DNA of 64,000 nt from Amphiscolops sp. MND2022 (Eukaryota), in assembly GCA_964187785.1 (NCBI GenBank), contig OZ076416.1:16554001-16618000 (forward strand). Direction: 5' to 3'. The translations under genes were made by a program, and so were the position numbers. Numbering within the stretch: the first letter of the stretch is position 1; each line of letters opens with the position of its first letter. A model generated the notes under the pieces. It had not been told where the DNA came from and did not search any database. It was given only the letters and a program-made list of their open reading frames with translations. This document shows, one piece after another, positions 21,393 through 58,199 of this stretch.

Positions 21393-21430
21393 TAACCGAA
21401 TAATTCCATAAATAGGCTTATCTCACAATA

Positions 21431-24400: not shown

Positions 24401-27400
24401 CATGTATCGTGATTACGGAGTTTCTCAAATCATGTATTGTGATTATGGAGTCTCTCAAATCAAGTATCGTGATTAAGGAGTTTCTCAAATCATGTATCGT
24501 GATTATGAAGTTTTTCAAATCATGTATCGTGATTATGGAGTTTCCCAAATCATGTATCGTGATTACGGAGTTTCTCAAATCATGTATTGTGATTATGGAG
24601 TTTCTCAAATCATGTATCGTGATAATGAATTTTCTCAAATCATGTATCGTGATTACGGAGTTTCTCAAATCATGTATTGTGATTATGGAGTCTCTCAAAT
24701 CATGTATCGTGATTAAGGAGTTTCTCAAATCATGTATCGTGATTATGAAGTTTCTCAAATCATGTATCGTGATTATGAAGTTTCCCAAATCATGTATCGT
24801 GATTACGGAGTTTCTCAAATCATGTATTGTGATTATGGAGTTTCTCAAATCATGTATCGTGGTTATGGATTTTCTCAAATCATGTAACGTGATTATGGAG
24901 TTTCTCAAATCATGTAACGTGAGTATGAAGTTTCCCAAATCATGTATCGTGATTATGGAGTTTCTCAAGTCATGTATTGTGATTATGAAGTTTCTCAAAT
25001 CATGTATCGTGATTACGGAGTTTCTCAAATCATGTTTTGTGATAATGGAGTTTCGAGTTTCTCAAATCATGCATCGTGATTATGGAGTTTCTCAAATCAT
25101 GTAACGTGATTATGAAGTTTCTCTAATCATGTATCGTGATTATGAAGTTTCTCAAATCATGTGTCGTGATTAGGGAGTTTCGAGTTTCTCAAATCATGCA
25201 TCGTGATTATGGAGTTTCTCAAATCATGTATCGTAATTATGAAGTTTCTCAAACCTAGTATTGTGATTATGGAGTTTCTCAAATCATGTATCGTGATTAT
25301 TGAGTTTCTCAAATCATGTATCGTGATTATGAAGTTTCTCAAATCATGTATCGTGATTACGGAGTTTCTCAAATCATGTTTTGTGATTATGGAGTCTCTC
25401 GAATCATGTATCGTGATTAGGGAGTTTCTCAAATCATGTATCGTGATTATGAAGTTTCTCAAATCATTTATCGTGATTATGGAGTTTCCCAAATCATGTA
25501 TCGTGATTACGGAGTTTCTCAAATCATGTATTGTGATTATGGAGTTTCTCAAATCATGTATCGTGATTATGAAGTTTCTCAAATCATGTATCGTGAATAC
25601 GGAGTTTCTCAAATCATGTATTGTGATTATGGAGTCTCTCAAATCATGTATCGTGATTAAGGAGTTTCTCAAATCATGTATCGTGATTATGAAGTTTCTC
25701 AAATCATGTATCGTGATTATGAAGTTTCCCAAATCATGTATCGTGATTACGGAGTTTCTCAAATCATGTATTGTGATTATGGAGTTTCTCAAATCATATA
25801 TCGTGGTTATGGAATTTCTCAAATCATATAACGTGATTATGGAGTTTCTCAAATCGTGTAACGTGAATATGAAGTTTCTCAAATCATGTATCGTGATTAT
25901 GGAGTTTCTCAAATCATGTATCGTGATTATGAAGTTTCTCAAATCATGTATCGTGATTACGGAGTTTCTCTAATCATGTATTGTGATAATGGAGTTTCGA
26001 GTTTCTCAAATCATGCATCGTGATTATGGAGTTTCTCAAATCATGTAACGTGATTATGAAGTTTCTCTAATCATGTATCGTGATTATGAAGTTTCTCAAA
26101 TCATGTGTCGTGATTATGGAGTTTCCCAAATCATGTATCGTGATTACGGAGTTTCTCAAATCATGTATTGTGATTATGGAGTTTCTCAAATCATGTATCG
26201 TGATTATGAAGTTTCTCAAATCATGTCTCGTGATTATGAAGTTTCCCAAATCATGTATCGTGATTACGGAGTTTCTCAAATCATGTATTGTGATTATGGA
26301 GTTTCTCAAATCATGTATCGTGGTTATGGATTTTCTCAAATCATGTAACGTGATTATGGAGTTTCTCAAATCATGTAACGTGAATATGAAGTTTCTCAAA
26401 TCATGTATCGTGATTATGGAGTTTCTCAAATCATGTATCGTGATTATGAAGTTTCTCAAATCATGTATCGTGATTACGGAGTTTCTCAAATCATGTATTG
26501 TGATTATGGAGTCTCTCAAATCATGTATCGTGATAAAGGAGTTTCTCAAATCATGTATCGTGATTATGAAGTTTCTCAAATCATGTATCGTGATTATGAA
26601 GTTTCCCAAATCATGTATCGTGATTACGGAGTTTCTCAAATTATGTATTGTGATTATGGAGTTTCTCAAATCATGTATCGTGGTTATGGATTTTCTCAAA
26701 TCATGTATCGTGATATTGGAGTTTCGAGTTTCTCAAATCATGCATCGTGATTATGGAGTATCTCAAATCATGTAACGTGATAATGAAGTTTCTCAAATCA
26801 TGTATCGTGATTATGGAGTTTCTCAAATCTTGTATCGTGATTATGAAATTTCTCAAACCATGTGTCGTGAGTACGGAGTTTCTCAAATCATGTATTGTGA
26901 TTATGGAGTTTCTCAAATCATGTATCGTGATTATGGAGTTTGTCGAATCATGTATCGTGATTATGCAATTTCTAAAATCATGTATCGTGATTATGAAGTT
27001 TTTCAAATCATGTATCGTGTTTATGGAGTTTCTCAAATCATGTATCGTGATTATGGAGTTTCTCAAATCATTTATAGTGATAATGGAGTTTCGAGTATCT
27101 CAAATCATGCATCGTGATTATGGAGTTTCTCAAATCATGTAACGTGATTATGAAGTTTCTCAAATCATGTATCGTGATTGTGGAGTTTCTCAAATCATGT
27201 ATCGTGATTATGAAGTTTCTCAAATCATGTATCGTGATTACGGAGTTTCTCAAATCATGTACTGTGATTATGGAGTCTCTCAAATCATGTATCGTGGTTA
27301 TGAAGTTTCGCAAATCATGTATCGCGTTTATGGAGTTTCTCAAATCATGTATCGTGATTATGGAGTTTCTCAAATCATGAATCGTGATTATGGAGTTTCT

Positions 27401-30400
27401 CACATCATGTATCGTGATTATGGAGTTTCTCAAATCATGTATCGTGATTATGAAGTTTCTCAAATCATGTATCGTGTTTATGGAGTTTCTCAAATAATGT
27501 ATCGTGATTATGGAGTTTCTCAAATCATATATAGTGATTATGAAGTTTTTCGAATCATGTATCGTGATTATGGAGTTTCTCAAATCATGTATCGTGATTA
27601 TGGAGTTTCTCAAATCATGCATCGTGATTATGGAGTTTCTCAAATCACCTAACGTGGTTATGAAGTTTCTCAAATCATGTATCGTGATTACGGAGTTTCT
27701 CAAATTATGTATTGTGATTATGGAGTTTCTCAAATCATGTATCGTGGTTATGGATTTTCTCAAATCATGTATCGTGATATTGGAGTTTCGAGTTTCTCAA
27801 ATCATGCATCGTGATTATGGAGTATCTCAAATCATGTAACGTGATAATGAAGTTTCTCAAATCATGTATCGTGATTATGGAGTTTCTCAAATCTTGTATC
27901 GTGATTATGAAATTTCTCAAACCATGTGTCGTGAGTACGGAGTTTCTCAAATCATGTATTGTGATTATGGAGTTTCTCAAATCATGTATCGTGATTATGG
28001 AGTTTGTCGAATCATGTATCGTGATTATGCAATTTCTAAAATCATGTATCGTGATTATGAAGTTTTTCAAATCATGTATCGTGTTTATGGAGTTTCTCAA
28101 ATCATGTATCGTGATTATGGAGTTTCTCAAATCATTTATAGTGATAATGGAGTTTCGAGTATCTCAAATCATGCATCGTGATTATGGAGTTTCTCAAATC
28201 ATGTAACGTGATTATGAAGTTTCTCAAATCATGTATCGTGATTGTGGAGTTTCTCAAATCATGTATCGTGATTATGAAGTTTCTCAAATCATGTATCGTG
28301 ATTACGGAGTTTCTCAAATCATGTACTGTGATTATGGAGTCTCTCAAATCATGTATCGTGGTTATGAAGTTTCGCAAATCATGTATCGCGTTTATGGAGT
28401 TTCTCAAATCATGTATCGTGATTATGGAGTTTCTCAAATCATGAATCGTGATTATGGAGTTTCTCACATCATGTATCGTGATTATGGAGTTTCTCAAATC
28501 ATGTATCGTGATTATGAAGTTTCTCAAATCATGTATCGTGTTTATGGAGTTTCTCAAATAATGTATCGTGATTATGGAGTTTCTCAAATCATATATAGTG
28601 ATTATGAAGTTTTTCGAATCATGTATCGTGATTATGGAGTTTCTCAAATCATGTATCGTGATTATGGAGTTTCTCAAATCATGCATCGTGATTATGGAGT
28701 TTCTCAAATCACCTAACGTGGTTATGAAGTTTCTCAAATCATGTATCGTGATTATGGAGTTTCTCAAGTCTTGTATCGTGATTATGAAGTTTGTCAAATC
28801 GTGTATCGTGATTTTGAAGTTTCTCAAATCATGTATTGTGATTATGAAGTTTTTCGAATCATGTATCGTGATTATGGAGTTTCTCAAATCATGTATCGTG
28901 ATTATAGAGTTTCTCAAATCATGTATCGTGATAATGGAGTTTCGAGTTTCTCAAATCATGCATCGTGATTATGGAGTTTCTCAAATCATGTATCGTGATT
29001 ATGGAGTTTCTCAAATCATATATCGTGATTATGGAAGTTTTCAAATCTTTTATCGTGATTATGGAATTTCTGAAATCATGTATCGTGATGATGGAGCTTC
29101 TCAAATCATGTATCGTGATTATGGAGTTTCTCAAATCATGTATCGTGATTATGGAGTTTCTCAAATCATGTATCATGATTATGAAGTTTCTCAAATCATG
29201 TATCGTGATTTTGGAGTTTCTCAAATCATGTATCGTGATTATGGAGTTTCTCAAATCATGTATCGTGATTATGGAAGTTTTCAAATCTTGTATCGTGATT
29301 ATGCAGTTTCTGAAATCATGTATCGTGATTATGAGCTTCTCAAATCATGTATCGTGATTATGGAGTTTCTCAAATCATGTATCATGATTATGGAGTTCTC
29401 AAATCATGTATCGTAATTATGGAGTTTCTCAAATCATGAATCGTGTTTATGGAGTTTCTCAAATCATGTATCGTGATTATGGAGTTTCTCAAATCATGTA
29501 TCGTGAGTATGAAGTTTCTCAAATCATGCATCGTGATTATGGAGTTTCTCAAATCATGTAACGTGATTATGAAGTTTCTCAAATCATGTATCGTGATTAT
29601 GGAGTTTCTCAAATCATGTATCGTGATTATGAAGTTTCTCAAATCATGTATCGTGATTTTGAAGTTTCTCAAATCGTGTATCGTGATCATGGAGTTTCTC
29701 AAATCATGTATCGTGATTATGGAAGTTTTCAAATCTTGTATCGTGATTATGGAATTTCTGAAATCATGTATCGTGATTATGAAGTTTCTCAAATCATGTA
29801 TCGTGATTTTGGAGTTTCTCAAATCATGTATCGTGATTATGGAGTTTCTCAAATCATGTATCGTGATTATGGAAGTTTTCAAATCTTGTATCGTGATTAT
29901 GGAGTTTCTGAAATCATGTATCGTGATTATGAGCTTCTCAAATCATGTATCATGATTATGGAGTTCTCAAATCATGTATCGTGATTATGGAGTTTCTCAA
30001 ATCATGTATCATGATTATGGAGTTCTCAAATCATGTATCGTGATTATGGAGTTTCTCAAATCATGTATCGTGAGTATGAAGTTTCTCAAATCATGCATCG
30101 TGATTATGGAGTTTCTCAAATCATGTAACGTGATTATGAAGTTTCTCAAATCATGTATCGTGATTATGGAGTTTCTCAAATCATGTATCGTGATTATGAA
30201 GTTTCTCAAATCATGTATCGTAATTTTGAAGTTTCTCAAATCGTGTATCGTGAATACGGAGTTTGTCAAATCATGTATTGTGATTATGGAGTTTCTCAAA
30301 ACATGTATCGTGATTTTGGAGTTTCTCAAATCATGTATCGTGATCATGGAGTTTCTCAAATCATGTATCGTGACTATGGAAATTTTCAAATCTTGTATCG

Positions 30401-32614
30401 CGATTATGGAATATCTGAAATCATGTATCGTGATTATGGAGCTTCTCAAATCATGTATCGTGATTTTGGAGTTTCTCAAATCATGTATCGTGATTATGGA
30501 GTTTCTCAAATCATGTATCGTGATTATGGAAGTTTTCAAATCTTGTATCGTGATTATGGAGTTTCTGAAATCATGTATCGTGATTATGAGCTTCTCAAAT
30601 CATGTATCGTGATTATGGAGTTTCTCAAATCATGTATCATGATTATGGAGTTCTCAAATCATGTATCGTGATTGTGGAGTTTCTCAAATCATGTATCGTG
30701 TTCATAGAGTTTCTCAAATCATGTATCGTGATTATGGAGTTTCTCAAATCATGTATCGTGAGTATGAAGTTTCTCAAATCATGCATCGTGATTATGGAGT
30801 TTCTCAAATCGTGTAACGTGATTATGAAGTTTCTCAAATCATGTATCGTGATTATGGAGTTTCTCAAATCATGTATCGTGATTATGAAGTTTCTCAAATC
30901 ATGTATCGTGATTTTGAAGTTTCTCAAATCGTGTATCGTGAATACGGAGTTTGTCAAATCATGTATTGTGATTATGGAGTTTCTCAAAACATGTATCGTG
31001 ATTTTGGAGTTTCTCAAATCATGTATTTGTATCATGGAGTTTCTCAAATCATGTATCGTGATTATGGAAGTTTTCAAATCTTGTATCGTGTTTTTGTAGT
31101 TTCTGAAATCATGTATCGTGAATATGGAGCTTCTTAAATCCTGTATCGTGATTATGGAGTTTCTCAAATAATGTATCGTGATTATTGAGCTTCTCAAATC
31201 CTGTATCGTGATTATGGATTTTCTCAAATCATGTATCGTGATTATGGAGTTTCTCAAATCATGTATCATGATTATGAAGTTTCTCAAATCATGTATCGTG
31301 ATTTTGGAGTTTCTCAAATCATGTATCGTGATTATGGAGTTTCTCAAATCATGTATCGTGATTATGGAAGTTTTCAAATATTGTATCGTGATTATGGAGT
31401 TTCTGAAATCATGTATCGTGATTATGAGCTTCTCAAATCATGAATCGTGATTATGGAGTTTCTCAAATCATGTATCATGATTATGGAGTTCTCAAATCAT
31501 GTATCGTGATTATGGAGTTTCTCAAATCATGTATCGTGTTCATAGAGTTTCTCAAATCATGTATCGTGATTATGGAGTTTCTCAAATCATGTATCGTGAG
31601 TATGAAGTTTCTCAAATCATGCATCGTGATTATGGAGTTTCTCAAATCATGTAACGTGATTATGAAGTTTCTCAAATCATGTATCGTGATTATGGAGTTT
31701 CTCAAATCATGTATCGTGATTATGAAGTTTCTCAAATCATGTATCGTGATTTTGAAGTTTCTCAAATCGTGTATCGTGAATACGGAGTTTTTCAAATCAT
31801 GTATTGTGATTATGGAGTTTCTCAAAACATGTATCGTGATTTTGGAGTTTCTCAAATCATGTATTGGTATCATGGAGTTTCTCAAATCATGTATCGTGAT
31901 TATGGAAGTTTTCAAATCTTGTATCGTGTTTTTGTAGTTTCTGAAATCATGTATCGTGATTATGGAGCTTCTCAAATCCTGTATCGTGATTATGGAGTTT
32001 CTCAAATCATGTATCGTGATTATGGAGCTTCTCAAAACCTGTGTCGTGATTATGGATTTTCTCAAATCATGTATCATGATTATGGAGTTTCTCATATCAT
32101 GTGTCGTCTTTATGGAGTTTCTCAAATCATGTGTCGTGATTATGGAGTTTCTCAAATCATGTATCGTGATTATGGAGTTTCTCAAATCATGTATCGTGAT
32201 TATGGAATTTCTCAAGTCATGTATCGTGATGATGGAGTTTCTCAAATCATGTATCGTCATAATGGAGTTTCTCAATTCTTGTATCGTGATTATGGAGTTT
32301 CTCAAATCATGTATCGTGATTATGGAGTTTCTCAAATCATGTGTCGTGATTTTGGAGGTTCTCAAATTATGTATCGTGGTAATGGAGTTTCTCAAATCAT
32401 GTATCGTGATTAGGGAGTTTCGAGTTTCTCAAATCATGCATCGTGATTATGGAGTTTCTCAAATCATGTATCGTAATTATGAAGTTTCTCAAACCTAGTA
32501 TTGTGATTATGGAGTTTCTCAAATCATGTATCGTGATTATGGAGTTTCTCAAATCATGTATCGAGATTATGGAGTTTCTCAAATCATTTATCGTGATTAT
32601 GGAGTTTCTCAAAT
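21431..32614. repeat. Satellite DNA array, 30-bp monomer GATTATGGAGTTTCTCAAATCATGTATCGT, about 370 copies with higher-order structure
   Basis: Continuous tandem array of about 11.2 kb; 37-bp (+GAGTTTC) and 29-bp variant monomers punctuate it. Confidence 0.98.
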
Positions 32615-32738
32615 GATCATGAAGAGTTTTGACTTATTTATTGATATAAAACATTGTGGATTTTTCAGAAAACGCTCAAACGTTAGTTGTTGTATAATGC
32701 AAATATGCAAGTTCTATTTTTATCCAATGAAGTCCGCT

Positions 32739-33575
32739 AACAAGACGCGAATATCTAAAGTCGGCGTCAAATCTAAGGCTCAAACAGCTCAAACGTTTTG
32801 AAATTGTAAAAGGGGGACCCTTTGGGTTTTTTGAAAATCCAATTTGTTGCGGGGTGTAACGTTTCAAACTTCGGATATAGCGTGCTGGCCCAAATGGGAG
32901 CGCTTTTTGAACCTCCGCCTCCTCTTCGGTAAAACGGAATATAATTCGGATATAACGTCAAAAATTCGGATATAGCGCTTTACTCAGGATATTACGTCCA
33001 AGTTTTGGATAGTTTTGGAAAAACTTATTGGTAGATATATATTGAGAAAACCTAATTTCAGACGAAAAATGACAATTTTGATCAGTCTCATAGTGCCGAA
33101 AAATCTAAAAGAAGGGACCCTTCGGGATTGTTTAATATCTATTATGTTACAAAATATTTAAAATATTGAAGGGGGTCCCTTTCATGACATTCAAAAAAAA
33201 TTCGAGAAAAAAAAACGAAAAATCGAAGAATAAGAATTTTGAGCCTGTCTCATAGTGCCAAAAACTTGAAAGGGGAGATCCTTTGGGCTCTTTGAAACTT
33301 CAATTTGCTGTAAAATATCGAAAAACTTGAAAAGGGGACCCTTTGGAGACGAAAAAATTTCGAAAAAAAGTCGCACAGTGCCGAAAAAAACTCAAAGGGG
33401 AGACCCTATTGTCTCGTCTTGTTTTGTATCTTACAATAAAAATGGAGTAACTGAAAAGGAGGACCCTTTGCACTATCCTAAATGCACTCCCCGTTTGCCG
33501 GTCCAGTAGTTTAGTACTTTTTTTAGTAGTTGAACGTTAATTTTAACGTTCGTCGCTTCGAGTCTGTCCTAAAAA
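32739..33575 (-). mobile_element. HINE-like element, copy 4 (5' end cut at the LTR element; internal insertion of CGGATATA repeats at about 32870-33000)
   Basis: AACAAGACG...TAAAGTCGGCGTC is the reverse of the 3' hairpin and sub-IR. Body is collinear with copy 1 up to GAGTCTGTC. Confidence 0.75.
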
Positions 33576-33584
33576 CTTTATGAA

Positions 33585-35047
33585 TGTCGCAGGCTGCCGC
33601 CTGTGACGGCACATACTACCAGGTCACTCCAACTAATGACCAAAGCAACCCCGGACCAGGAGTCTTATCTATATAAAACACTCTCAAACTTTTAGAGCCT
33701 CAAAACAGTCAACTGACATTTACTTGCATTGATAAACTGATACAATTTTAATTGCAAGCAATATCTAATGTTTTACTAATTTGACCTGTAGTCATGTAGA
33801 CCGTATGAAATGTTCATTGTATTTATTTGACGTCCTTCATGGTGTAAAAGGAAACACATTCTGCTAAGAAAGCGTTGCAGTCTAATTGACGTGTTGTCCA
33901 CCATGATCACCTACGGCGCTAATAATGATTTTAGTACACTCATGCAGTCATTGTGACGCATAGTCGTATTTTAACTTTATGTAACTAGCAGTGCTAATTA
34001 AGCTATTTGGTGCCGTCACGTCAATTTGACGTTAGGTCAACATGTTCTTTCATGCTGTTTGATATCTATTTGATATGGATATTTTGACGCGATGTAGCAT
34101 CGCGTACATGAATTCACTAGTGATAGTTCGTAAACCACTTAAACTACTTCAATTCTATTTTTAGTGCATTACGTAATGTGACGCAATGTATGATTTGTAG
34201 CTATTTATAGCGAATTTGATGTCATGTATAAATTTAGGTCCTTGACATTCCAAATAATGAGTGTCATGGTCCGAATACTATATATGCTCGGATGCATTTG
34301 TGGATGTAATCATTGTTGATATTGCGAACGCTATTAAAACTGACAATTTCATACACTTTACCATTAGTCAATTCATTGTTGAAAATAAAGCGAACTTTCT
34401 TCACTATGCCTTCAACTAGAAAGCAGAAAGCTAAAGAAAAGAGAGCAAGGCAATCAGACGTAAGGTCAGATATTGAAAACCTTGAGGTTATGCTTGGAAG
34501 CTATTCTAGAGATGCTCTAGTAGAGCAAGGTAATGTTAGTGATGTAGAAAAGGACTTTGAGTCTAGTAGACACCAGCAAAATACTGATCTAATTGAAGGG
34601 AACCTCAGGTCACTTTTAAATGCTAATGAAAGCGAGAACAGTGAAATTACTGCAGAAACTATGAGGGTGAATAATTCAGAATTTTCCTCCCAAATGTCTA
34701 GAGAAAAAGATGAAATTAGATCTGACCTAAATTTGCAAATATTGGATGCTATTAACTCAGCAATCCAAGAAAAGGTGCTTCCTTCCATTGAAAATGCGCT
34801 AAAACCAGTTAAAACAGCTTCAAATGCTAAATGGGACCTTCGGTCAGATGGACCGCAGTCGAGCAGGGTGAATCAGCCATACGTGCAATATGACCTGAAG
34901 TCAGGCGGACTGCACAAAAGCAAGAAAGCTCAAATGAGCAAATACATTGACCTTAGGTCAGATGGACTGCATCTGGACAGATTCGGCCAGGATGCTCAGG
35001 AATGTGACCCTCGGTCAGATAGACCGCACCAAAGCGAAAATACGCAA
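33585..35047 (+). repeat. 5' LTR, missing its last 115 bp
   Basis: Matches 39603-41060, then diverges abruptly after AATACGCAA. Confidence 0.88.
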
Positions 35048-35353
35048 AATTGCGACTTAACAAACACTTCTGATGATCCTCCAGTTGATTCTGGGCACCA
35101 GGACGCCATAATTACAGATTTGGACCTTCAGTCCACCCGACGTGACCAAAATACTGACGACGCTGCTACCTTCGGTCCGCTCGACTGCAGCAAGATACTA
35201 ATTCAGATGAGTCTGAGCAAATGCCTGAGCAGCCGGATGAAAATATTGCTGACACGGACCTTAGGTCAACTCGACCGCAATCAAGTACTGATTCCGAAAT
35301 CGATGAAAATACCTCTAAAAGCCCCTCAGAAGCGGGAAATTCTGATTTTTTGA
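34406..35353 (+). CDS. ORF1 (MPSTRKQKAKEKRARQ...), chimeric across the deletion junction at 35047
   Basis: ATG at 34406 lies inside the LTR; basic N-terminus, coiled-coil segment, 19-aa DLRSDG repeats. Confidence 0.6.
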   Translation: MPSTRKQKAKEKRARQSDVRSDIENLEVMLGSYSRDALVEQGNVSDVEKDFESSRHQQNTDLIEGNLRSLLNANESENSEITAETMRVNNSEFSSQMSREKDEIRSDLNLQILDAINSAIQEKVLPSIENALKPVKTASNAKWDLRSDGPQSSRVNQPYVQYDLKSGGLHKSKKAQMSKYIDLRSDGLHLDRFGQDAQECDPRSDRPHQSENTQNCDLTNTSDDPPVDSGHQDAIITDLDLQSTRRDQNTDDAATFGPLDCSKILIQMSLSKCLSSRMKILLTRTLGQLDRNQVLIPKSMKIPLKAPQKREILIF

Positions 35354-35495
35354 ATTCTAGAGGGAAGGATATAATCGTGCCCGATTTATCAGACAATGAA
35401 GGTGATGAAATGGTTGTAGAAAATGAAAGTCCCAGGGGATGAAAATATAATCTACGTCCTAACCCTACCCTAAACTTTACTGATGAATACAGATA
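35221..35495 (+). pseudogene. Probable C-terminal tail of the deleted pol polyprotein
   Basis: Acidic low-complexity segment ending ...NESPRG*KYNLRPNPTLNFTDEYR*. A YNLR-type tail resembles gypsy integrase C-termini (inference). Confidence 0.4.
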
Positions 35496-35698
35496 ATGGC
35501 CAGAATATGTAAATTAAAGGCCCACAGTCCCCATCAACCGAGGTTATATATTTTAACTGGGCCCAATCTGACTGAAAGTATTCATGACTGCATGGATACA
35601 ATTATGCTAAATATAATACAAACAGAAATCGGATGCAATAATAAAGAACAACTGCGACAAGAAACAACCATAACAAAAAGAAATGAGATACAGTTCAT

Positions 35699-36877
35699 TC
35701 AATTGCAATTAAAGTTTACTACTGGAAGCTCGCAAATCTTCAGCAGAACGAGACAATTCGGTATCTGACAGCAAACGCCTACTACGTTTGTTTGACCTCG
35801 GGACTCCCAGAGACTTTGGGGCACTTCGAGAACTAGATGTAGCGGAATGACCCCCTCGTTCACTGCCGTGTGGATGTTCATCAGGTTCTTCAAGAGCCTT
35901 ACACATTTGAGAGCAAAAGTAGGGTGTCCTTGTGGCAGACTAATCGGCCGGGTCTCACTGAAGTATTTTCTGATGATCTCCCTACTTCCAATAGAGAGGG
36001 CAGCTAATCCGGTAGGCTCCCTGGGCTGATCTATAACAGTGATTTCGCTGGAGTCGTCAGACTGATCAGATGTGTCTCGTCGTACAGTATGAGCCATGGT
36101 TTGTGCAAATGTCGAACGTGGGTGGACGCTAGACTCTTGGTCACTGTCGACAGCATTTGGGGCCTCACTACTAGTGTACCCGATTAACGAAGTACTCTCA
36201 AATTGTTCGCCATCACTTGATGGTGTGTGAGAAGTAGGACGCAAAAATTTGGAAAACGTCCCAAGCTGGAGATCAGGTCCATGCGGCCCGGTAGTCGCGA
36301 TGTTCACTTCTGTCGGCACCTTCTTCTGCCGTGGCAAAGTTCGTGGATCCACTAAAATTGGAGCAGATGTACTCGGGACCAGTTCAGCCTCAATACAATG
36401 GGACTCCTGGGTAGCATCCATGACTGGGGATTCGTCTTCTGTGGTCGTTTCAAACGTTGGGATCTTGTCACTAATACTAACTTTAGGGGACTTCTCGGGA
36501 CTTTCAACTGTGACCTTAAGGTCTTGCATCATGTCCAACTTTCTAGCTATGAAGGCACTGCAGCTTTCTTCTGATCCACTGCTGTTAAACAGTAGCGCAG
36601 CTGCCAAACTCGCCTCATCTTGTTTATTTGCAGTCACATAAACAGGAGTCACGTTGACGGGAGGTAGACTTGAACTTTGGACTAATACACTTTGATCCTT
36701 TTCCAATTCTGGGAAAGAATGGATTTTGGGGGAAACGCCCTGTTCGGGAGCAACAACTGATATCGGAGTCGTGTCCATTTCTTCTTCACCTGTTTGCTGG
36801 GTCGGTTGGCCGTTCGGTTCATTGTCTGAGCAAAAAGATATGAATAAGCGCGGTTCACTTCCTGCATAAAAATCCAT
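35699..36877 (-). CDS. Antisense accessory ORF (about 390 aa; S/T/P/E-rich, unknown function; probable frameshift near the C-terminus)
   Basis: Open frame of 406 codons in the ORF track, first ATG at 36877, inside the LTR element on the opposite strand. Confidence 0.6.
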   Translation of the reverse strand: MDFYAGSEPRLFISFCSDNEPNGQPTQQTGEEEMDTTPISVVAPEQGVSPKIHSFPELEKDQSVLVQSSSLPPVNVTPVYVTANKQDEASLAAALLFNSSGSEESCSAFIARKLDMMQDLKVTVESPEKSPKVSISDKIPTFETTTEDESPVMDATQESHCIEAELVPSTSAPILVDPRTLPRQKKVPTEVNIATTGPHGPDLQLGTFSKFLRPTSHTPSSDGEQFESTSLIGYTSSEAPNAVDSDQESSVHPRSTFAQTMAHTVRRDTSDQSDDSSEITVIDQPREPTGLAALSIGSREIIRKYFSETRPISLPQGHPTFALKCVRLLKNLMNIHTAVNEGVIPLHLVLEVPQSLWESRGQTNVVGVCCQIPNCLVLLKICELPVVNFNCN

Positions 36878-37829
36878 CTTACCGCTTGAAAGACTTCCGG
36901 AAGCAAGTTTAAAATTCAACTATTTCACACAGCGTGTTATTATTTCACGATGGAGGAAGACACTTAGTCAATTGCGAACCCTGATCATGTTCAATTTTGG
37001 CAAATTAAAAGAACCAATCTGATGCTTTTTCCATGACGGAAAGGCAGAAATTTCAGTCTCAGCCAGGAAAAGAAGATAAGTTGACCCGACCAGTGATAAG
37101 TATGTTGGGATTCTCACGCAGTTGAAATAGTCTTCAGCAACCTCTGAGGTTAACTGTATGATTATTGAAATTCCAGGTCAAGAAATTCCTCTCGCTCGTA
37201 AATGTGGATGACCCAAAGTCAACGGGACTGCATACGGATTTTGGTACTCACTGACAGTGTGGATCAGTCGACGACAATGTGTAATCAGATATTCTGCTAA
37301 TCAACTCCCAATTTCTTTTTGATTAAATTCTCACGAGTAATATGAAGGGGAATGGTTAATTCGGACAATTCAAATTCAAAAATTTACAAACTGTGCTAGC
37401 TGAGAGAATAATCTCGCAATTTGTGCGAGAATCCTAGTAGCAATTCCAAGACTAAATTGGAAAGCAGGACTAAAGCAAGAGACTGCATCAAATCCTGACT
37501 GGAATTAACTCAAATCAGTTGAAAGTCCTTGGAAGTTATGTTCAATTGCTAATTATGACATTGAAGCAGAACTATATTGGACACAATATGAACAACTGGA
37601 TTTCAAAGATGAGTACGATACTGTGATTAGATGACGTAATGGCCGTTACCATCTGTCAATCATAATTATCATTTACTTAAGCTGACTGTACATCCGCTTG
37701 ACTACTACTTATTACTTACTTATTAAAAATTACATTATAGGACAATAAGTCCGTTTGACTGCAAACGAATACATGTACTCACTTATTGGAAAAGTTGGTC
37801 CGGCAATACACCTAGCCTCATTCCTCCAT

Positions 37830-37980
37830 ATTGTGACGTCACACATGTTGAATGACCAACGGTCAACCGGACTGCATTCAGTTACTCACATGCACACAAT
37901 CGCTTAGAGAGAATTAAAATCACTCCCACTTTGTGACGTCACCCACGCTGTCTGACCACCGGTCAGCTGGACAGCAATGA
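37830..37980. promoter_or_regulatory. Duplicated module (100-bp period) with CRE palindrome and TGACC-N3-GGTCA
   Basis: TGACGTCA at 37834 and 37934; TGACC-AAC-GGTCA at 37853 and TGACC-ACC-GGTCA at 37953. Lies between the two divergent ORFs. Confidence 0.55.
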
Positions 37981-38866
37981 CCTACTAACTTGAATTCATC
38001 CCATTGGCTGGGACACAATAGGCCTCTGGAATGAAATGAAGTAATTACCAGAAACTATCCTCATTAAAGGACGCTGAGTCCATTTGACCGCCTCAATTCC
38101 TTAACTCTCACCCATTATGAAAATTTAAACCAAATTACGGGTATTGACACAGATAATTCACTTCGTACAAGAAACCTTTAGTACATGAAGAAGTCGTGGC
38201 TAAATACAAATTAACTGAAATTCAGATTTCACGCTTTTCCTAAAAAAATCTACACTGTGATGTCTTCTTGTTCAATTGAACCTGCCAGTGAAGTGAGATT
38301 GTCAAGTAACATCATTTCATTTTCGTTTAATTGGATTCATAATCAAACTTTAACCGCGATCATCATATCTTTTCTTCAGTCATTATCAGTTATCATTTAG
38401 CAAATTAATTCGGTTTCATTTATTTAATTTCATTCTTTCATTTTCATTCATTCATCAACGCCCTCTGATTGGTCATCACGCGGACTGCCGTCAGGCAGAC
38501 CGACTGTCTTTGAACTACTAGTATTGACGAATATTAATGTTTGTAAACACTCATCCGACTGGTTAACACCGCTTAATATATCTTTGAAGGGGAAAGCAAA
38601 CTACCTTCAAGTGGTACTTGACGAGCGATTCTCACAACTCATTCATAATTTGTTGATGACCAACTTATTTTATTCGACCCTAAAAGGGAAAGTTAAGGAA
38701 ATGTTTTGGAGGATTTCCCTCCACCCGTTCCCGCGGAAAAGGGGAGTTGACCCAAGGTCTAACGGACTAGAACGATTCAGTCATAGAATCCAAAATCTAG
38801 TAATCAGTCGCTCAAGATCGAACCAAAATTGCAAACAAACTTCTCCTCAGCCGATACAGCAGAGAT

Positions 38867-39694
38867 ATGTCTCTTCAATTCAAGATAGAAGAATATCCAA
38901 GATCCCTAGTCAGCTCAGCCTACGCTTCCTCTGATGAAGACATGGACATAGACTCAGTGATTTCGATCCAAGATCAGTGGGACAGGGAATCGGGTGATGA
39001 TGAAATTCAGGTACTGACCTGTTATCACGAGAATCCACCGTTCCCCCCGCAACTTGTAGCAGGAAGGACAATGACGACCAGCCTGACCCAATGTCTTGAT
39101 GACTTGAGCTTGCCGTCAACCCATTGTAATGATACCATTGACACTTTCACCGAACCCTCAGGTGAACTGGTCAATTGGCCGATAGGGCACCCACCTGCAA
39201 CTTATGACCATCAACCAATTGAATACCATCCAACCGCAGACTGTGGTCAACTCAACCCAGTAGTCGTGTCACCCGCATCACCCCCTTTGATTGACCACAT
39301 GCCATCCTATCAGTACGAAAACCAGTACCAACCTGGGCACTACATTGACCAGTGGGCACGTAATCCTCACATCACCGGCCTAGCTATTTCAGCTAGCGGT
39401 TCCTGTGGACAATCCAACGATGTGTACCACTCTGACTGTATCGTCTGCGGCAAGTCTTTCCCAGAAATCACTGAAGAAATTACGCTGGGATACCTAGAAG
39501 GCAATCACGTCACAGGCGAAACGTACGACCAACGGATGGAGAGGAGACGAGCGTTTCAAGCTGGTATGAAGGCAGGTTCCTTCATTTTATTCCCCCAGGG
39601 AGTGTCGCAGGCTGCCGCCTGTTACGGCACATACTACCAGGTCACTCCAACTAATGACCAAAGCAACCCCGGACCAGGAGTCTTACCTATATAA
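38867..39694 (+). CDS. Sense accessory ORF (275 aa, unknown) ending 92 nt inside the 3' LTR
   Basis: Uninterrupted ATG-to-TAA frame with acidic N-terminus, Pro-rich middle and HSDCIVCGK (CxxC) followed by a helical C-terminal segment. Confidence 0.65.
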   Translation: MSLQFKIEEYPRSLVSSAYASSDEDMDIDSVISIQDQWDRESGDDEIQVLTCYHENPPFPPQLVAGRTMTTSLTQCLDDLSLPSTHCNDTIDTFTEPSGELVNWPIGHPPATYDHQPIEYHPTADCGQLNPVVVSPASPPLIDHMPSYQYENQYQPGHYIDQWARNPHITGLAISASGSCGQSNDVYHSDCIVCGKSFPEITEEITLGYLEGNHVTGETYDQRMERRRAFQAGMKAGSFILFPQGVSQAAACYGTYYQVTPTNDQSNPGPGVLPI

Positions 39695-41175
39695 AACACT
39701 CTCAAACTTTTAGAGCCTCAAAACAGTCAACTGACATTTACTTGTATTGATAAACTGATACGATATTAATTGCAAGCAACATCTAATGTTTTACTAATTT
39801 GACCTGTAGTCATGTAGACCGTATGAAATGTTCATTGTATTTATTTGACGCCTTTCATGGTGCAAAAGGAAACACATTCTGCTAAGAAAGCGTTGCAGTC
39901 TAATTGACGTGTTGTCCACCATGATCACATACGGCGCTAATAATGATTTTAGTACACTCATGCAGTCATTGTGACGCATAGTCGTATTTGAACTTCAAGT
40001 AACTTGCAGTGCTAATTAAGCTATTTGGTGCCGTCAATTTGACGTTAGGTCAACATGTTCTTTCATGCTGTTTGATATCTATTTGATATGGATATTTTGA
40101 CGCGATGTAGCACCGCGTACATGAATTCACTAGTGATAGTTCGTAAACCACTTAAACTACTTCAATTCTATTTTTAGTGCATTACGTAATGTGACGCAAT
40201 GTATGATTTGTAGCTATTTATAGCGAATATGATGTCATGTATAAATTTAGGTCCTTGACATTCCAAACAATGAGTGTCATGGTCCGAATACTATATAAGC
40301 TCGGATGCATTTGTGGATGTAATCATTGTTGATATTGCGAACGCTATTAAAACTGACAATTTCATACACTTTACCATTAGTCAATTCATTGTTGAAAATA
40401 AAGCGAACTTTCTTCACTATGCCTTCAACTAGAAAGCAGAAAGCTAAAGAAAGGAGAGCAAGGCAATCAGACGTAATGTCAGATATTGAAAACCTTGAAG
40501 TTATGCTTGGGAGCTATTCTAGAGATGCTCTAGTAGAGCAAGGTAATGTTAGTGATGTAGAAAGGGACTTTGAGTCTAGTAGACACCAGCAAAATAGTGA
40601 TCTAATTGAAGGGAACATCAGGTCACTTTTAAATGCTAATGAAAGCGAGAACAGTGAAATCACTGCAGAAACTATGAGGGTGATTAATTCGGAAATTTCC
40701 TCCCAAATGTCTAGAAAAATAGATGAAATTAGATCTGACTTAAATTTGCAAATATTGGATGCTATTAACTCAGCAATCCAAGAAAAGGTGCTTCCTTCCA
40801 TTGAAAATGCGCTAAAACCAGTTAAAACAGCTTCAAATGCAAAATGGGGCCTTCGGTCAGATGGACCGCAGTCGAGCAGGGTGAATCAGCCAGACCTGCA
40901 ATATGACCTGAAGTCAGGCGGACTGCACAAAAGCAAGAAAGCTCAAATGAGCAAATACATTGACCTTAGGTCAGATGGACTGCATCTGGACAGATTCGGC
41001 CAGGATGCTCACGTATGTGACCCTCGGTCAGATAGACCGCACCAAAGCGAAAATACGCAATCTAACCTAGAAACAGGTGAAAATCGCTCTAAAATGAGTT
41101 TTAAAGAAAGTAACCGTGCCAATCATCTCAGAGAGAGTTCAATAGACTCTATTGAGAGTGAAGATGGTTACGACA
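39603..41175 (+). repeat. 3' LTR (1573 bp), complete
   Basis: TGTCGC...TACGACA termini, followed by ATGAC (TSD copy). Confidence 0.9.
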
Positions 41176-41201
41176 ATGACCTTGAGAAACAGTCAGGGTG
41201 A
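40419..41201 (+). CDS. ORF1 copy within the 3' LTR (252 codons with no stop inside the LTR; terminates in flanking DNA)
   Basis: Same sequence as 34406 onward; open through the LTR end at 41175. Confidence 0.6.
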   Translation: MPSTRKQKAKERRARQSDVMSDIENLEVMLGSYSRDALVEQGNVSDVERDFESSRHQQNSDLIEGNIRSLLNANESENSEITAETMRVINSEISSQMSRKIDEIRSDLNLQILDAINSAIQEKVLPSIENALKPVKTASNAKWGLRSDGPQSSRVNQPDLQYDLKSGGLHKSKKAQMSKYIDLRSDGLHLDRFGQDAHVCDPRSDRPHQSENTQSNLETGENRSKMSFKESNRANHLRESSIDSIESEDGYDNDLEKQSG

Positions 41202-48768: not shown

Positions 48769-49702
48769 GATATGAGACCCTCCTGTATTCATTTTGATGG
48801 TACATCAACATCGTTCCAACATACATTTTTGTCTTCGTTCCTTATTTGAAAGGTATGATGTCGTTTCTCATTTTTGCGACGGTTCGCGAAAGTCAGATTG
48901 GTATACACAGGTTACTGGTATATATTGGTTACTGGTATATACCCGTCAGATATGTTTTTTGAAGGGAACGGTGAAAGATTCATTTTTGTCTGCTGTCAAT
49001 CTTCCAATATAATGATTGTACTTCGTTTTGCTAATGTTTTTGAAAGCTCAGGTTTTTCTTTTTCGTTTCCAGTTGGTTGGTTTACATCGGGTAAAAATTG
49101 ATACGGCACTAGCAGAGAGCCTCCGAGCCACAATGAGGACATTGATAACAATCAGTGAGTGTTACTTCTAGAAAAACTCTATATCCGACAGTTATGCTGA
49201 CTTTATGCATGAGAAACGATAAACCGGTTAATATTTGGTCGTTTACACTTCCATTTCGACGGTTTCCCTTCCTTTGCAAAAGTTTTCCAATTTTTGGTTT
49301 TTTCTAATGACCAAGAATGTTCTGAGTCTCGAACCGCTTGCGAAGATCTTACATATTTTTATAAACTCTTGTTTAATCCTAAAATCCTTGATGAGATGTA
49401 ACGGCAAGCGTGGCCACAAAACGTTGAAGGAACCTGATCAATGGGTATATCGCACAGTGCTGGCGAACTTCAACACAGATCCATTTTATATCCTAGGTGT
49501 CGTGCCAGTAGAAGGAGGTCCTACTCGCCCCAAGAGAAGCTCTCCGATCGAACCCAGTAACAGGCATCTTGCTTTTGCTCTTTGCTCTCTCTGGAATACC
49601 GCTTAGAAATCTTTTCAACACGTTTAGAATGAAGCAGTGTAAATTTCAAATTGTTCAGGTTGACATGTGGAATAACGTCAAAAATTGCAAGAAGTAGCCA
49701 TA

Positions 49703-50414
49703 TGTCACGTCCGACTGGCGGCGCACATCTAGGAAGTGGGACAATGCTTAGGGTGCTTAAACAGGAAACCGTTGTTTTACTACAGCCCTAGGCACAAGTT
49801 TTCTCCCAAAATGGTCTCCCAGGGGGACTATTCTGACGTCAAAGGAGGCTCCTACGTTAGAGCTCCGGGGAGACGCTCGAAGTCCGGACAAGTTCCACAA
49901 GCCGGTAAAAAGGAATCCTAAGGTTCCTAACGTGTTCCCGCGACTCCTACATACCTTCGAGGTCCAAAAACGGTGTTCAGCAAACGTGCATTATATTTGC
50001 AGAATTAGATCAAAAATTAGCAAACAAAATGGGATCTGCTAGATCCAATTTCATCACAAATCTGCTAACAACATTGATGACAATGAAATTAACTACTAAG
50101 AGTTCCTCGGGCATCTACAAGATGTTTCCGGAGTTCTTGCAAAGATCCACTGACAGGTTGCACCTTGATTCTGGAGGGTCACTTCCGACATTTTCCTGAA
50201 TGAAATGGCACCACACTGGCTTTCACTCTCATTTCAGCCTCTTCCGGGTGTCTTCGGGTGTCGGGGCCTACGGGGAGATCTGTTTGTACGTTTGTTTTTG
50301 GTTCTTGTACAATTTTCCTATGCACCGGGTCGGCCATCTTGAATGTGCTTATTTGATACCGCACATTTCGACTTGTTCATCGAAATTTTGTAACATCGAC
50401 TGCCTGACGTTACA
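49703..50414 (-). repeat. 3' LTR of the 49.7-54.7 kb element
   Basis: TGT...ACA termini; homologous to 53984-54687. Confidence 0.8.
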
Positions 50415-53400: not shown

Positions 53401-53983
53401 CATAGTTTTCGCGCTCAAATTTTTTAACAATCGGCCTGAACATCCTTAGGGAATTTTTCCCTGTTAGTTTACATAGAAATAGGCCGAGGAATTTGCTTTG
53501 TCGGCTGCTAAATAAGGAAAATGGGGAATGTAACCCGTTTGATGTGTGGATACGGCAATCACAGGGGTGTGCGCAGTGTGGTTGCGTAGGACGTCACGTC
53601 TTGGTGTCGGCTAGCGGGAACCTTCACTGCATATCCTCTCGGTCCCAATACATTGCAAATTTGCTGTAATGAGGCTACAGAACCCTTTAAAACCAATTCC
53701 GGATTAGTCGGTTTAACTTTTTCAACAGGTATAGTAGAAGCAAAGGGGGTACACTGTTTGAAACCGTTCTTTCTCGTTCCAGACCTCGGGGACATGCAGG
53801 AAACCCCGGAATTCCGTTAGAAGAAATCCTGGTAGGCTCGAAAAAAGCAATAAACACAATCTAGGACCCTCTCATAAGTTTTCATAGATCTGGACCCTCC
53901 GGGACCGGAAGGCAGGACAACCTTCTAGATGGACGCAAAAGTGAAAAATATCCCTTTTTGGTCGCCATAAAAACTATTCCAGA

Positions 53984-54687
53984 TGTAACGTCCGGCTGGC
54001 GGCGCACATCTAGGAAGTGGGACAATGCCTATGGTGCTTAAACAGGAGACCGTTGTTTTACTACAGCCCTAGGCACTAGTTTTTCTCCCAAAATGGTCTC
54101 CCAGGGGGACTATTCTGACGTCAAAGGAGGCTCCTCCGTTAGATCTCCGGAGCGGCGCTCCAAGTTCGGACACGTCCCAGAAGCCTGTAAAAACGAATCC
54201 TAAGGTTCCTAACGTGTTCCCGCGACTCTTACATACCTTCGAGGTCCAAAAACGGTGTTCAGCAAAAGTGCATTATATTTGCAGAAATAGATCTTAATTT
54301 AGCAAAATTGGGATCTGCTATATCCAATTTCATCACAAATCTGCTAAAAACATTAATGGCAATCAAATTAACTACTAAGAGTTCCTTGGGCATCTTCAAC
54401 ATGGGTCCGGAGTTCTTGCAAGATCCACTGACAGGCACCTTGATTCTGGAGGGTCTCTTCCGACATTTTCCCGAATGAAATGGCACCACACTGGGTTTCA
54501 CTCTCTTTTCAGCCTCTTCCGGGTGTCTTCGGGTGTCGGGGCCTACGGGGTGGTCTGTTTGTACGTTTTCTTGGTTCTTCTACGATTTTTGTTCCTGCCG
54601 GGTAGGCCATCTTGAATGTGCTTATTTGATACCGCACATTTCGAATTTTTCACCGAAATTTTGTAACTTCGACTGCCTGACGTTACA
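53984..54687 (-). repeat. 5' LTR of the 49.7-54.7 kb element
   Basis: Perfect TGTAACG...CGTTACA inverted termini; homologous to 49703-50414. Confidence 0.8.
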
Positions 54688-57855: not shown

Positions 57856-58199
57856 TTCTGTTTCCAAAAGTTGGTTTTTTCTCAGAAACCTTTTTGGCAT
57901 CCTATAAGTCAAGAGCAGCATTGCTAGGAAACGTAAAACACTTAAGAAATATTCCTCTAAGAAATGCAAAGCATATAAAAAATCTTGCATGTACAAAAAG
58001 AATGAAATTTGTAGAAATTGAAATGATTAACTCCCAAGATATTGCGATAATCTGAAAATAATGACATTTGATCGTTACGCCTTCATCACATTTCAAGATC
58101 TTCTGGATCTTATCACGATTTATGCATCTATGCCTCAGAGTAGTCAAGAACCAATAGGCTTCACTCTAGCCTATGAATATGAAGGTTTCTTCTATTTAG

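What the first reader, a model, noticed from the sequence alone, without database searches (positions are those of the whole stretch)
33782..41041. 24-bp motif repeated about 17 times, all on one strand, through coding and non-coding parts of one LTR element
The consensus (T/G)GACC-N3-(G/A)GTCA-N3-GGAC(T/C)GCA appears in the LTR U3-like region (33782, 39800). It appears four times at an exact 57-bp period inside the LTR ORF (34834, 34891, 34948, 35005, and 40847, 40904, 40961, 41018). It also occurs in the post-junction tail (35122, 35166, 35256) and in the non-coding interior (37209, 37853, 37953, 38748). The N3 positions vary while block spacing is fixed. Because non-coding copies exist, the DLRSDG peptide repeat looks like a by-product of a nucleotide-level signal. 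The first 13 bp are a dyad (TGACC-N3-GGTCA): either an RNA GACC/GGUC triloop hairpin or an everted pair of nuclear-receptor-type half-sites. One-strand orientation favours an RNA signal (packaging, dimerisation, export) or an oriented protein-binding array. Retention in a gag-pol-less element fits a cis signal for mobilisation in trans (inference). I do not know of a described equivalent.
Basis: partly seen in the sequence, partly recalled or inferred. Interest (0 to 1): 0.82.

Follow-up and report, generated by a model that had tools for sequence, protein, structure and literature searches.

The report
Conserved motif array in a retrotransposon
A 24-33-base signal is kept letter for letter, about 15-30 times per copy, throughout one large family of LTR retrotransposons, even at silent codon positions on both coding strands, so it is almost certainly a docking site for a still unidentified protein rather than a by-product of a protein repeat.

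Summary
The motif is real. All 17 listed copies are present, against about 0.1 expected by chance. The 57-bp period in the ORF is exact. The host element is a single LTR retrotransposon at 33585-41175, flanked by a 4/5 target-site duplication.

The "LTR ORF" is the first ~214 codons of Gag. In this Ty3/gypsy-like family those codons lie inside the LTR, with the primer-binding site inside gag. The "tail" is the 3' end of pol.

Diverged full-length relatives (45-60% Gag identity) keep the motif at the same places: U3, gag, protease, the integrase tail, and the introns and an exon of an antisense zinc-finger gene.

The constraint is on nucleotides, not on the peptide. The variable residues are exactly the sets encoded by NRG and CNG codons. 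Silent sites are frozen inside the motif, including one minus-strand copy.

The invariant parts are the half-sites. The spacers are free, covariation is weak, and enhancer-like minus-strand copies sit upstream of the TATA box. I therefore favour a duplex-DNA protein-binding array (0.4) over an RNA signal (0.25).

No binder has been identified and I found no described equivalent.

The parts
33585..41175 (+). Whole LTR retrotransposon copy. It is an internally deleted derivative that lacks most of gag, PR, RT, RNase H and most of IN.
   Evidence: The LTR pair is 97% identical. The ends are TG...CA. The flanks ATGAA (33580-33584) and ATGAC (41176-41180) match 4/5 as a target-site duplication. Similarity to relative L002 stops exactly at 41175.
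33585..35047 (+). 5' LTR, cut about 128 bp short at its 3' end and joined to the end of pol. It contains U3, a TATA box near 34279, AATAAA near 34385 and the gag ATG at 34406.
   Evidence: Window 35049 aligns to L002 2744, inside the integrase ORF.
39603..41175 (+). Complete 3' LTR of 1573 bp. It ends in GGTTACGACA.
   Evidence: In full-length relatives this decamer is followed by a conserved TGG-initiated primer-binding site. In the window, L002 and L007 the sequence diverges right after it.
34406..35047 (+). It carries the weak +147 motif copy at 34552 and four copies 57 bp apart at 34834, 34891, 34948 and 35005.
   Evidence: More than 448 relatives were found, some fused to PF03564 and followed by PR-RT-IN.
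40419..41201 (+). The same Gag N-terminal ORF in the 3' LTR, 260 aa, running 26 nt into flanking DNA. Motif copies are at 40565 (weak), 40847, 40904, 40961 and 41018.
33782..33805 (+). U3 plus-strand motif copy, about 200 nt from the LTR start. Its twin is at 39800-39823.
   Evidence: A copy sits at the same offset in L003, L005, L006, L007 and L008 although the U3 sequences have diverged.
33876..34039 (-). Three minus-strand motif copies in U3, at 33876-33899, 33943-33966 and about 34016-34039. They are 67-68 bp apart and 250-385 bp upstream of the TATA box. Their twins lie at 39894-40052.
   Evidence: The same arrangement is seen in every relative.
35049..35442 (+). Last ~130 codons of pol (the integrase C-terminal tail), with motif copies at 35122, 35166 and 35256. 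The frame is broken by a 34-nt gap relative to L002 at 35167/35168.
35702..36877 (-). Antisense ORF of 392 aa. It corresponds to only the N-terminal part of exon 1 of the family's antisense gene. The zinc-finger part and the later exons are absent from this subfamily.
37209..38771 (+). Interior non-coding copies at 37209, 37740, 37853, 37953, 38069 and 38748, lying between the antisense ATG and ORF3. Perfect CRE palindromes (TGACGTCA) at 37834-37841 and 37934-37941 lie 11 nt upstream of two of them. One minus-strand copy is at 38486-38508.
   Evidence: (D20).
38867..39694 (+). ORF3, 275 aa, no known domain. It ends 91 nt inside U3. A motif copy lies about 120 nt upstream of its ATG, here and in L003.

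Best explanation
The motif is a family-specific composite recognition site, kGACC-N3-rGTCA-N3-kGAC-n-GCA, often followed by N6-TAC. I propose that a sequence-specific protein, probably a multimer, reads it on duplex DNA.

Shown:
- The site is built of alternately oriented GAC/GTC half-sites at a fixed 8-bp spacing, with unconstrained spacers.
- It is conserved at nucleotide level in both orientations.
- It is densest in the LTR. The window's 1.57-kb 3' LTR holds nine copies: one + copy and three - copies upstream of the TATA box, and five + copies in the first 650 nt downstream.
- It recurs next to the internal region between the antisense gene and ORF3.

Inferred:
- The bound factor controls sense and antisense transcription, or the chromatin state of the element.
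- Copies inside ORFs are kept by selection on silent sites and on tolerant, disordered protein segments.
- The binder is either a host factor that reads TGAC half-sites or the element's own antisense-encoded zinc-finger protein.
For: 1. Nucleotide rather than peptide constraint. The residue sets equal the NRG and CNG codon sets. Codons are fixed in peptide-selected copies. Third-codon positions are invariant in 22/40 sites inside the motif against 34/154 in the flanks (p = 1.3e-4).
2. Both orientations are functional. The minus-strand copy in integrase has 8/8 invariant silent sites against 12/40 in its flanks (p = 3e-4). Minus-strand U3 copies occur in every subfamily, 66-70 bp apart and upstream of the TATA box, with the same GCA and TAC extensions.
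3. The architecture is that of a DNA site. Half-sites are invariant, spacers are free and spacing is fixed. Protein-bound RNA hairpins usually show the opposite pattern, which is my own knowledge.
4. There is no convincing covariation.
5. Canonical CRE palindromes abut two interior copies, and TGACG half-sites form the core of the U3 copies.
6. The motif is strictly element-specific: 0 copies in 87.5 kb of flanks.
7. The family carries an antisense gene with an invariant Cx2Cx16Hx5H finger.
Against: - There is a 72:23 excess of sense-strand copies. This falls to about 10-12 against 4-5 when tandem clusters and homologous sites are counted once, which is not significant. That recount is my own by-eye estimate.
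- Many copies lie kilobases from any promoter, inside gag, protease, the integrase tail and antisense introns, where a transcription-factor role is not obvious.
- An 8-bp half-site spacing is unusual for dimeric DNA binders.
- No binder has been identified. The zinc-finger model matched BED fingers only at non-significant E-values.
- The window/L002 subfamily has lost the finger-encoding part yet keeps the motif.
- All relatives come from one assembly and there are no expression data.
Confidence: 0.4

Rival explanations
1. It is an RNA cis-signal on the genomic (sense) transcript. The copies would be dispersed binding sites or small GACC/GGUC hairpins, or palindromes for RNA-RNA contact. They would serve packaging by Gag-NC, dimerisation or nuclear export.
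For: - There is a roughly 3:1 sense-strand excess.
- Three to five copies lie within the first ~650 nt of the RNA. A packaging signal would have to sit there, because the 5' UTR is only about 90 nt long.
- Gag is followed by an NC with two CCHC knuckles.
- Hairpin 1 is thermodynamically possible. Its isolated free energy is about -3 kcal/mol and its in-context pairing probability averages 0.44.
- There is a weak association between T1-A13 and G1-C13.
- Precedent: in Ty1 the PBS and palindromic sequences lie in the GAG ORF, and those palindromes bind Gag and are proposed to mediate dimerisation (PMC4974528).
Against: - The stem letters are invariant while the loops are free.
- The closing pair 5-9 is unpaired in 24/61 copies and pair 1-13 in 26/61. 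The covariation score only marginally exceeds shuffles (10/500), and that signal comes from homologous pol-tail copies.
- Hairpin 2 shows no signal.
- Minus-strand copies are real, conserved and in one case under silent-site constraint.
- Rfam has nothing.
Confidence: 0.25
2. The signal acts on single-stranded nucleic acid during reverse transcription. It could, for example, provide pause, transfer or priming sites read on plus- or minus-strand cDNA. That would allow both orientations to matter.
For: Both orientations are conserved. Copies concentrate in U3, U5 and next to the pol end, regions involved in strand transfers. The small palindromes could fold in single-stranded DNA (by analogy).
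Against: The motif is not purine-rich like known plus-strand primers. There is no positional link to the PBS or PPT. No known precedent has this architecture, and nothing here tests the idea directly.
Confidence: 0.08
3. It is a short linear peptide motif (D-L-R-S-D-G-x-H) selected in Gag and Pol, for example a cleavage or docking site. The non-coding copies would be decayed remnants.
For: Seven of eight sense coding copies use the same reading frame. The first Gag copy is almost invariant as a peptide.
Against: - The variable residues are chemically unrelated but share codon letters.
- Synonymous codons are fixed.
- Copies in U3, in antisense introns and in one antisense exon cannot encode the peptide, and many have a stop in that frame.
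- One protease copy is in another frame.
- The frames reduce to about 5 independent groups, 4 of 5 in one frame, which is not significant. That grouping is my own by-eye estimate.
Confidence: 0.03
4. It is a neutral by-product. An old minisatellite unit spread by duplication and is kept similar by gene conversion or template switching.
For: Local clusters are tandem: 57 bp in gag, 78-93 bp in the pol tail and 67 bp in U3.
Against: Conversion would homogenise the spacers too, yet the spacers and flanks are unrelated while fixed letters persist across subfamilies with 45-60% Gag identity. Copies sit at homologous positions in all subfamilies.
Confidence: 0.04

Closest known systems
HTLV-1 U3 21-bp Tax-responsive repeats with the antisense-encoded regulator HBZ (own knowledge)
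   Same: A retroelement whose U3 carries several ~21-24-bp imperfect repeats with TGACG-type cores upstream of the TATA box. It also encodes a spliced antisense regulatory gene.
   Different: Here the sites also run through gag, pol and the antisense gene. The motif has three half-sites plus GCA. The antisense product has a zinc finger rather than a bZIP domain. No binding or regulation has been shown.
Su(Hw) binding-site array of Drosophila gypsy (own knowledge)
   Same: A Ty3/gypsy element with a dozen similarly oriented copies of a zinc-finger protein site with variable spacers.
   Different: The gypsy sites form one non-coding cluster in the 5' UTR. Here the copies are dispersed over about 12 kb, embedded in ORFs on both coding strands, and occur in both orientations.
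Ty1 5' cis-acting domain: PBS and palindromic PAL sequences inside the GAG ORF (PMC4974528)
   Same: Gag starts within the LTR region, the PBS lies inside gag, and short palindromes in gag coding sequence bind Gag and are proposed to mediate dimerisation.
   Different: Here about 214 Gag codons lie inside the LTR. The motif is repeated 15-30 times along the whole element, and nothing has been tested.
Dispersed or repeated packaging signals of RNA viruses, such as alphavirus GGG stem-loops and MS2-type packaging signals (own knowledge)
   Same: Many short, similar elements embedded in coding sequence under silent-site constraint.
   Different: In those systems the loops are conserved and the stems covary, and the signals are strictly on the genomic strand. 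Here the reverse pattern is seen, and minus-strand copies are conserved.
Oestrogen-response-type palindrome GGTCA-N3-TGACC of nuclear receptors (own knowledge)
   Same: A subset of copies contains exactly this core, for example at L003 4759 and 12169.
   Different: The base that completes the second half-site (position 21) is free. The base before GGTCA is free. GCA and a third upstream half-site are required.

Membership tests
Ty3/gypsy-type LTR retrotransposon (host element) | Direct LTRs with TG...CA ends and a target-site duplication | tested here: met
   The LTRs at 33585-35047 and 39603-41175 are 97% identical. The flanks ATGAA and ATGAC match 4/5.
Ty3/gypsy-type LTR retrotransposon (host element) | Gag with CCHC knuckles, and a pol order of PR-RT-RNase H-IN | tested here: met
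   This is met in the relatives L003, L005 and L006, with precomputed Pfam hits gag-asp_proteas, RVT_1, RT_RNaseH, Integrase_H2C2 and rve and two CCHC knuckles. The window copy itself keeps only the Gag N-terminus and the pol tail.
Ty3/gypsy-type LTR retrotransposon (host element) | tRNA primer-binding site directly after the 5' LTR | tested here: met
   A conserved TGG-initiated 18-mer follows GGTTACGACA in four full-length relatives. It is absent after 3' LTRs. The tRNA was not identified.
Nuclear-receptor response element (ERE-type IR3) | Two RGGTCA hexamers as an inverted repeat with a 3-bp spacer, both G-G dinucleotides conserved | tested here: not met
   Position 21 is C, G, T or A. Position 17 is T in only about a third of copies. 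The base 5' of GGTCA is unconstrained.
CRE / bZIP site | TGACGTCA palindrome or abutting half-sites | tested here: not met
   The motif's half-sites are separated by 3 bp. True CREs occur only beside two interior copies. The U3 minus-strand copies contain CGTCA-N3-TGACG.
Structured RNA element (Rfam family or novel hairpin) | Match to a curated model, or base pairs supported by compensatory change | tested here: inconclusive
   There is no Rfam match at E <= 1. The inner pairs never vary. The outer pairs are unpaired in 39-43% of copies. Covariation is 0.097 against 0.070 +/- 0.012, with 10 of 500 shuffles reaching the observed score.
m6A DRACH site | D-R-A-C-H at the conserved GAC blocks | tested here: not met
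   Block 1 fits (kGACC). Block 3 is frequently GGACG or CGAC, which violate D or H, and GTCA and GCA remain unexplained.
BED-type zinc finger (antisense gene product, candidate binder) | Cx2C...Hx3-5H finger with the BED fold | tested here: inconclusive
   Cx2Cx16Hx5H is invariant in 42 sequences. There is no Pfam hit above threshold. The AF2 model is confident only for residues ~460-540. Foldseek lists BED fingers 2ct5 and 9l4j at E = 4-9, which is not significant.

The most novel reading that the evidence does not exclude
The motif is the operator array of a self-contained regulatory circuit. On this reading the element's own antisense, intron-containing zinc-finger gene encodes the protein that binds the 15-30 sites spread over its LTRs, coding regions and introns. 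An invertebrate-type LTR retrotransposon would then carry both a sequence-specific regulator and its binding sites, functionally comparable to complex retroviruses.
Probability: 0.15. Interest if true: 0.85.

Novelty: new variant of a known kind. Interest (0 to 1): 0.6.

Why it matters
Repeated factor-binding sites in LTRs are commonplace. A single composite site kept at silent codon positions through gag, protease, integrase, an antisense exon and antisense introns is not. Here it is held at homologous places in subfamilies that share only about half of their Gag residues.

If the site is a DNA element, it shows that a retrotransposon can thread regulatory or chromatin-control sites through its whole body. 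It would also supply a clean sequence handle (GAC/GTC triplets) for finding the factor.

If the site is an RNA signal, it would be the first dispersed packaging-type signal described for an LTR retrotransposon.

The host family is itself unusual. About 214 Gag codons and a long U5 lie inside the LTR, the PBS lies inside gag, and the element carries a spliced antisense zinc-finger gene and a third sense ORF. It is therefore worth describing whatever the motif turns out to do.

Tried and rejected
- Pfam scans of the Gag N-terminal ORF, the antisense ORFs and ORF3 gave nothing above threshold.
- Rfam, at gathering thresholds and at E <= 1, gave nothing.
- Scans for relatives in JGI metagenomes by protein gave none. 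A double-motif DNA pattern found one 1.6-kb contig, L004, taken as chance. IMG/VR gave none. All relatives therefore come from one ENA assembly, ERZ25074608.
- A profile search of PDB sequences with antisense exon 1 gave nothing. The AlphaFold2 model is mostly low-confidence (mean pLDDT 52), and Foldseek against the PDB found nothing significant.
- I considered a splice-signal reading of the sequence downstream of interior copies. The TTACTTAC / TCACCTG strings are the reverse complements of 5' splice sites of the antisense gene, and the motif's TAC block overlaps them. I rejected this as the motif's function, because U3 and sense coding copies have the TAC block without any splice site.
- I rejected m6A, oestrogen-response-element and CRE identities (see the membership tests).
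- I rejected the peptide reading.
- The reading-frame bias (7 of 8 copies in one frame) is not significant once tandem copies are grouped.
- Three literature searches found no description of this family or motif.
- The host organism was not identified.

Full report
**1. Observation**

Sixteen of them are on the + strand and all lie between 33782 and 41041. The weaker copies at 35122 and 35166 are also present. The four ORF copies are exactly 57 bp apart in both repeats.

A stricter pattern, GAC-N5-GTCA-N3-kGAC-n-GCA with up to 1 mismatch, has a chance expectation of 0.01. It also gives 19 hits, but six are on the minus strand, at 33876, 33943, 38486, 39894, 39961 and 40029. The motif is real and the coordinates are right. 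"All on one strand" is wrong.

**2. The element**

- The direct repeat 33582-35047 / 39600-41060 is 97% identical.
- Relative L002 is 95% identical and collinear from window 35049 to 41175, where similarity stops.
- The repeat starts with TG at 33585/39603 and ends with GGTTACGACA at 41166-41175.
- The flanks are ATGAA and ATGAC.
- In four full-length relatives GGTTACGACA is followed by a conserved TGG-initiated 18-mer, a primer-binding site. In three 3'-LTR contexts (window, L002, L007) the sequence diverges at that point.

The LTR is therefore 1573 bp. It contains a TATA box, an AATAAA about 15-20 nt upstream of the gag ATG, the gag ATG itself and about 214 Gag codons. The PBS lies inside gag. 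Ty1 has its PBS inside the GAG ORF too (PMC4974528); that Gag starts within the LTR in Ty1, on a much smaller scale, is my own knowledge.

The 5' LTR of the window copy is cut at 35047 and joined to the last ~130 codons of pol. A 34-nt gap relative to L002 at 35167/35168 changes the frame.

**3. The family**

The ORF has more than 448 relatives, all from one ENA assembly. Some are fused to PF03564. Loci L003, L005 and L006 show full-length elements with this layout:
- gag, followed by an NC with two CCHC knuckles;
- PR, dUTPase, RT, RNase H and IN.

Downstream of pol lies a conserved antisense gene.
- Codon-like conservation on the minus strand and canonical GT...AG introns define at least three exons.
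- Exon 1 (about 715 aa) has an invariant Cx2Cx16Hx5H finger.
- There is no significant sequence or fold match. BED fingers appear only at E = 4-9.

A third sense ORF (window 38867-39694) ends inside U3 and is conserved in L002, L003 and L007. The window/L002 subfamily keeps only the N-terminal ~390 codons of antisense exon 1.

**4. The motif across the family**

In subfamilies with 45-60% Gag identity the motif recurs at homologous places:
- U3, about 200 nt from the LTR start, on the + strand;
- two or three minus-strand copies, 66-70 bp apart, upstream of the TATA box;
- gag +147, +429 and +486;
- two sites in the protease region, one of them in a different reading frame;
- one to three copies in the last 200 nt of pol (in L003 the pol stop codon lies inside block 3);
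- the introns of the antisense gene, 14-37 nt from their donors;
- a variable stretch of antisense exon 1;
- about 120 nt upstream of ORF3;
- minus-strand copies in PR/RT and in IN.

The skeleton GAC-N5-GTC-N5-GAC occurs 72 times on the sense strand and 23 times on the antisense strand in 58.5 kb of element. It occurs zero times in 87.5 kb of flanks.

Letters that were not forced by the search are conserved as well. GCA occupies positions 22-24. TAC occupies positions 31-33 in 36/88 + copies and 10/34 - copies, against at most 7 at any other offset.

**5. Nucleotide or peptide?**

- In 120 relatives, position 3 of the second Gag copy is E 44, R 36, G 12, K 10, Q 6, W 3. These are the six NRG-encoded residues and account for 111/113 sequences.
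- Position 7 is R, L, P or Q, the four CNG-encoded residues, in 109/112 sequences.
- In copies selected by peptide pattern only, Asp is GAC in 38/39 (background 50%). Ser is TCA or TCC in 35/39 and never AGY (background 34%). Position 6 is NGA in 36/39.
- Third-codon positions are invariant in 22/40 sites inside the motif against 34/154 in the flanks (p = 1.3e-4).
- Non-coding copies often carry TGAC in block 3, which is a stop in the peptide frame.

The constraint is on the nucleic acid.

**6. RNA or DNA?**

Evidence bearing on an RNA hairpin:
- The three inner pairs never vary, so they carry no information.
- Pair 5-9 is unpaired in 24/61 copies and pair 1-13 in 26/61.
- The covariation score is 0.097 against 0.070 +/- 0.012, reached by 10 of 500 shuffles. 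The signal is driven by homologous pol-tail copies.
- The alternative hairpin shows nothing.
- Hairpin 1 is marginally stable, at about -3 kcal/mol, with an in-context pairing probability of 0.44.

Evidence bearing on duplex DNA:
- The minus-strand integrase copy has 8/8 invariant silent sites against 12/40 in its flanks (p = 3e-4).
- The U3 minus-strand copies share the GCA and TAC extensions and sit in an enhancer-like array.
- Two interior copies abut perfect CRE palindromes.
- Invariant half-sites, free spacers, fixed spacing and function in both orientations fit a duplex-DNA protein site better than a genomic-RNA signal.

The sense excess is 72:23. It falls to about 10-12 against 4-5 when tandem clusters and homologous sites are counted once. 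That recount is my own by-eye estimate from the site lists.

I therefore prefer a DNA protein-binding array (0.4). An RNA cis-signal comes second (0.25). It is helped by the cluster near the 5' end of the RNA, the ~90-nt 5' UTR, the CCHC-containing NC and the Ty1 precedent.

**7. Comparison and novelty**

The closest analogues are:
- the HTLV-1 21-bp repeats together with the antisense regulator HBZ;
- the Su(Hw) site array of Drosophila gypsy;
- the Ty1 cis-acting sequences inside GAG;
- the dispersed packaging signals of RNA viruses.

None of these shares the combination seen here: dispersal through ORFs on both coding strands, silent-site constraint, both orientations and family-wide positional conservation.

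The ERE, CRE and DRACH definitions are not met, and Rfam has no match. Three literature searches found no description. I class the finding as a new variant of a known kind, namely repeated cis-acting sites in retroelements.

**8. Limits**

- All relatives come from one assembly.
- The host is unidentified.
- There are no expression or binding data.
- Copies found by pattern search are circular evidence for the forced letters. The conclusions therefore rest on the unforced tests.

Noticed in passing
window 21428-32617: An 11-kb tandem satellite with a 30-bp unit, about 88-90% identity between copies and a strong positive GC skew. The long ORFs across it on both strands are artefacts of the periodicity.
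   Followed up: partly
L005 17189-21173, L006 17194-21350, L003 12725-20117, L007 3957-6594 (minus strand); window 35702-36877: The family carries a conserved antisense gene with at least two GT...AG introns and an invariant Cx2Cx16Hx5H finger. It has more than 136 relatives in the same assembly and no known domain. The window copy keeps only the N-terminal part of exon 1.
   Followed up: partly
window 34406-35047 and 40419-41175; L003 6081, L005 10637, L006 10640, L008 10622: About 214 Gag codons lie inside the LTR, and the primer-binding site (TGG-initiated 18-mer) is translated as part of Gag. This explains why most database relatives of the ORF are only 210-260 aa long: they are read from 3' or solo LTRs.
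   Followed up: yes
window 38867-39694; L002 6555-7379; L003 21329-22152; L007 8324-9049: A third sense ORF (about 240-275 aa, no known domain) lies between the antisense gene and the 3' LTR. Its last 30 codons are encoded by the start of U3.
   Followed up: partly
L003 14652-20281: A 1603-bp unit is tandemly triplicated inside the antisense gene of this copy. It duplicates the finger-encoding part of exon 1 and one motif copy per unit.
   Followed up: no
L005 1-9100: Upstream of this element lies a Polinton/Maverick-like gene set on the minus strand, including a double-jelly-roll capsid-like protein (PF21738) and a Pox_A32-type packaging ATPase (PF04665).
   Followed up: no
L005 12190-14646, L006 11789-16966: The pol polyprotein of full-length relatives carries a weak dUTPase hit (PF00692) between protease and RT.
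   Followed up: no
window 2064-2530 vs 33133-33575 (inverted); 57276-57856 vs 59480-60103; 49698-50414 vs 53979-54687; 60900-62030 vs 62870-64000: Other dispersed repeats occur in the window. One fragment (84% identical, inverted) abuts the 5' flank of the element. The 1.1-kb pair at the window's end is 99.9% identical.
   Followed up: no
window 37826-37892 and 37926-37992: A 100-bp tandem duplication. Each unit contains a perfect CRE palindrome, a motif copy 11 nt downstream, and then the reverse complement of a splice donor.
   Followed up: partly
L004 31-99: This is the only hit of a two-copy motif pattern in JGI metagenomes, on a 1.6-kb contig. The protein-level scan of that collection found no relative of the Gag ORF; L004's own coding content was not examined. 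I take the match as chance.
   Followed up: partly
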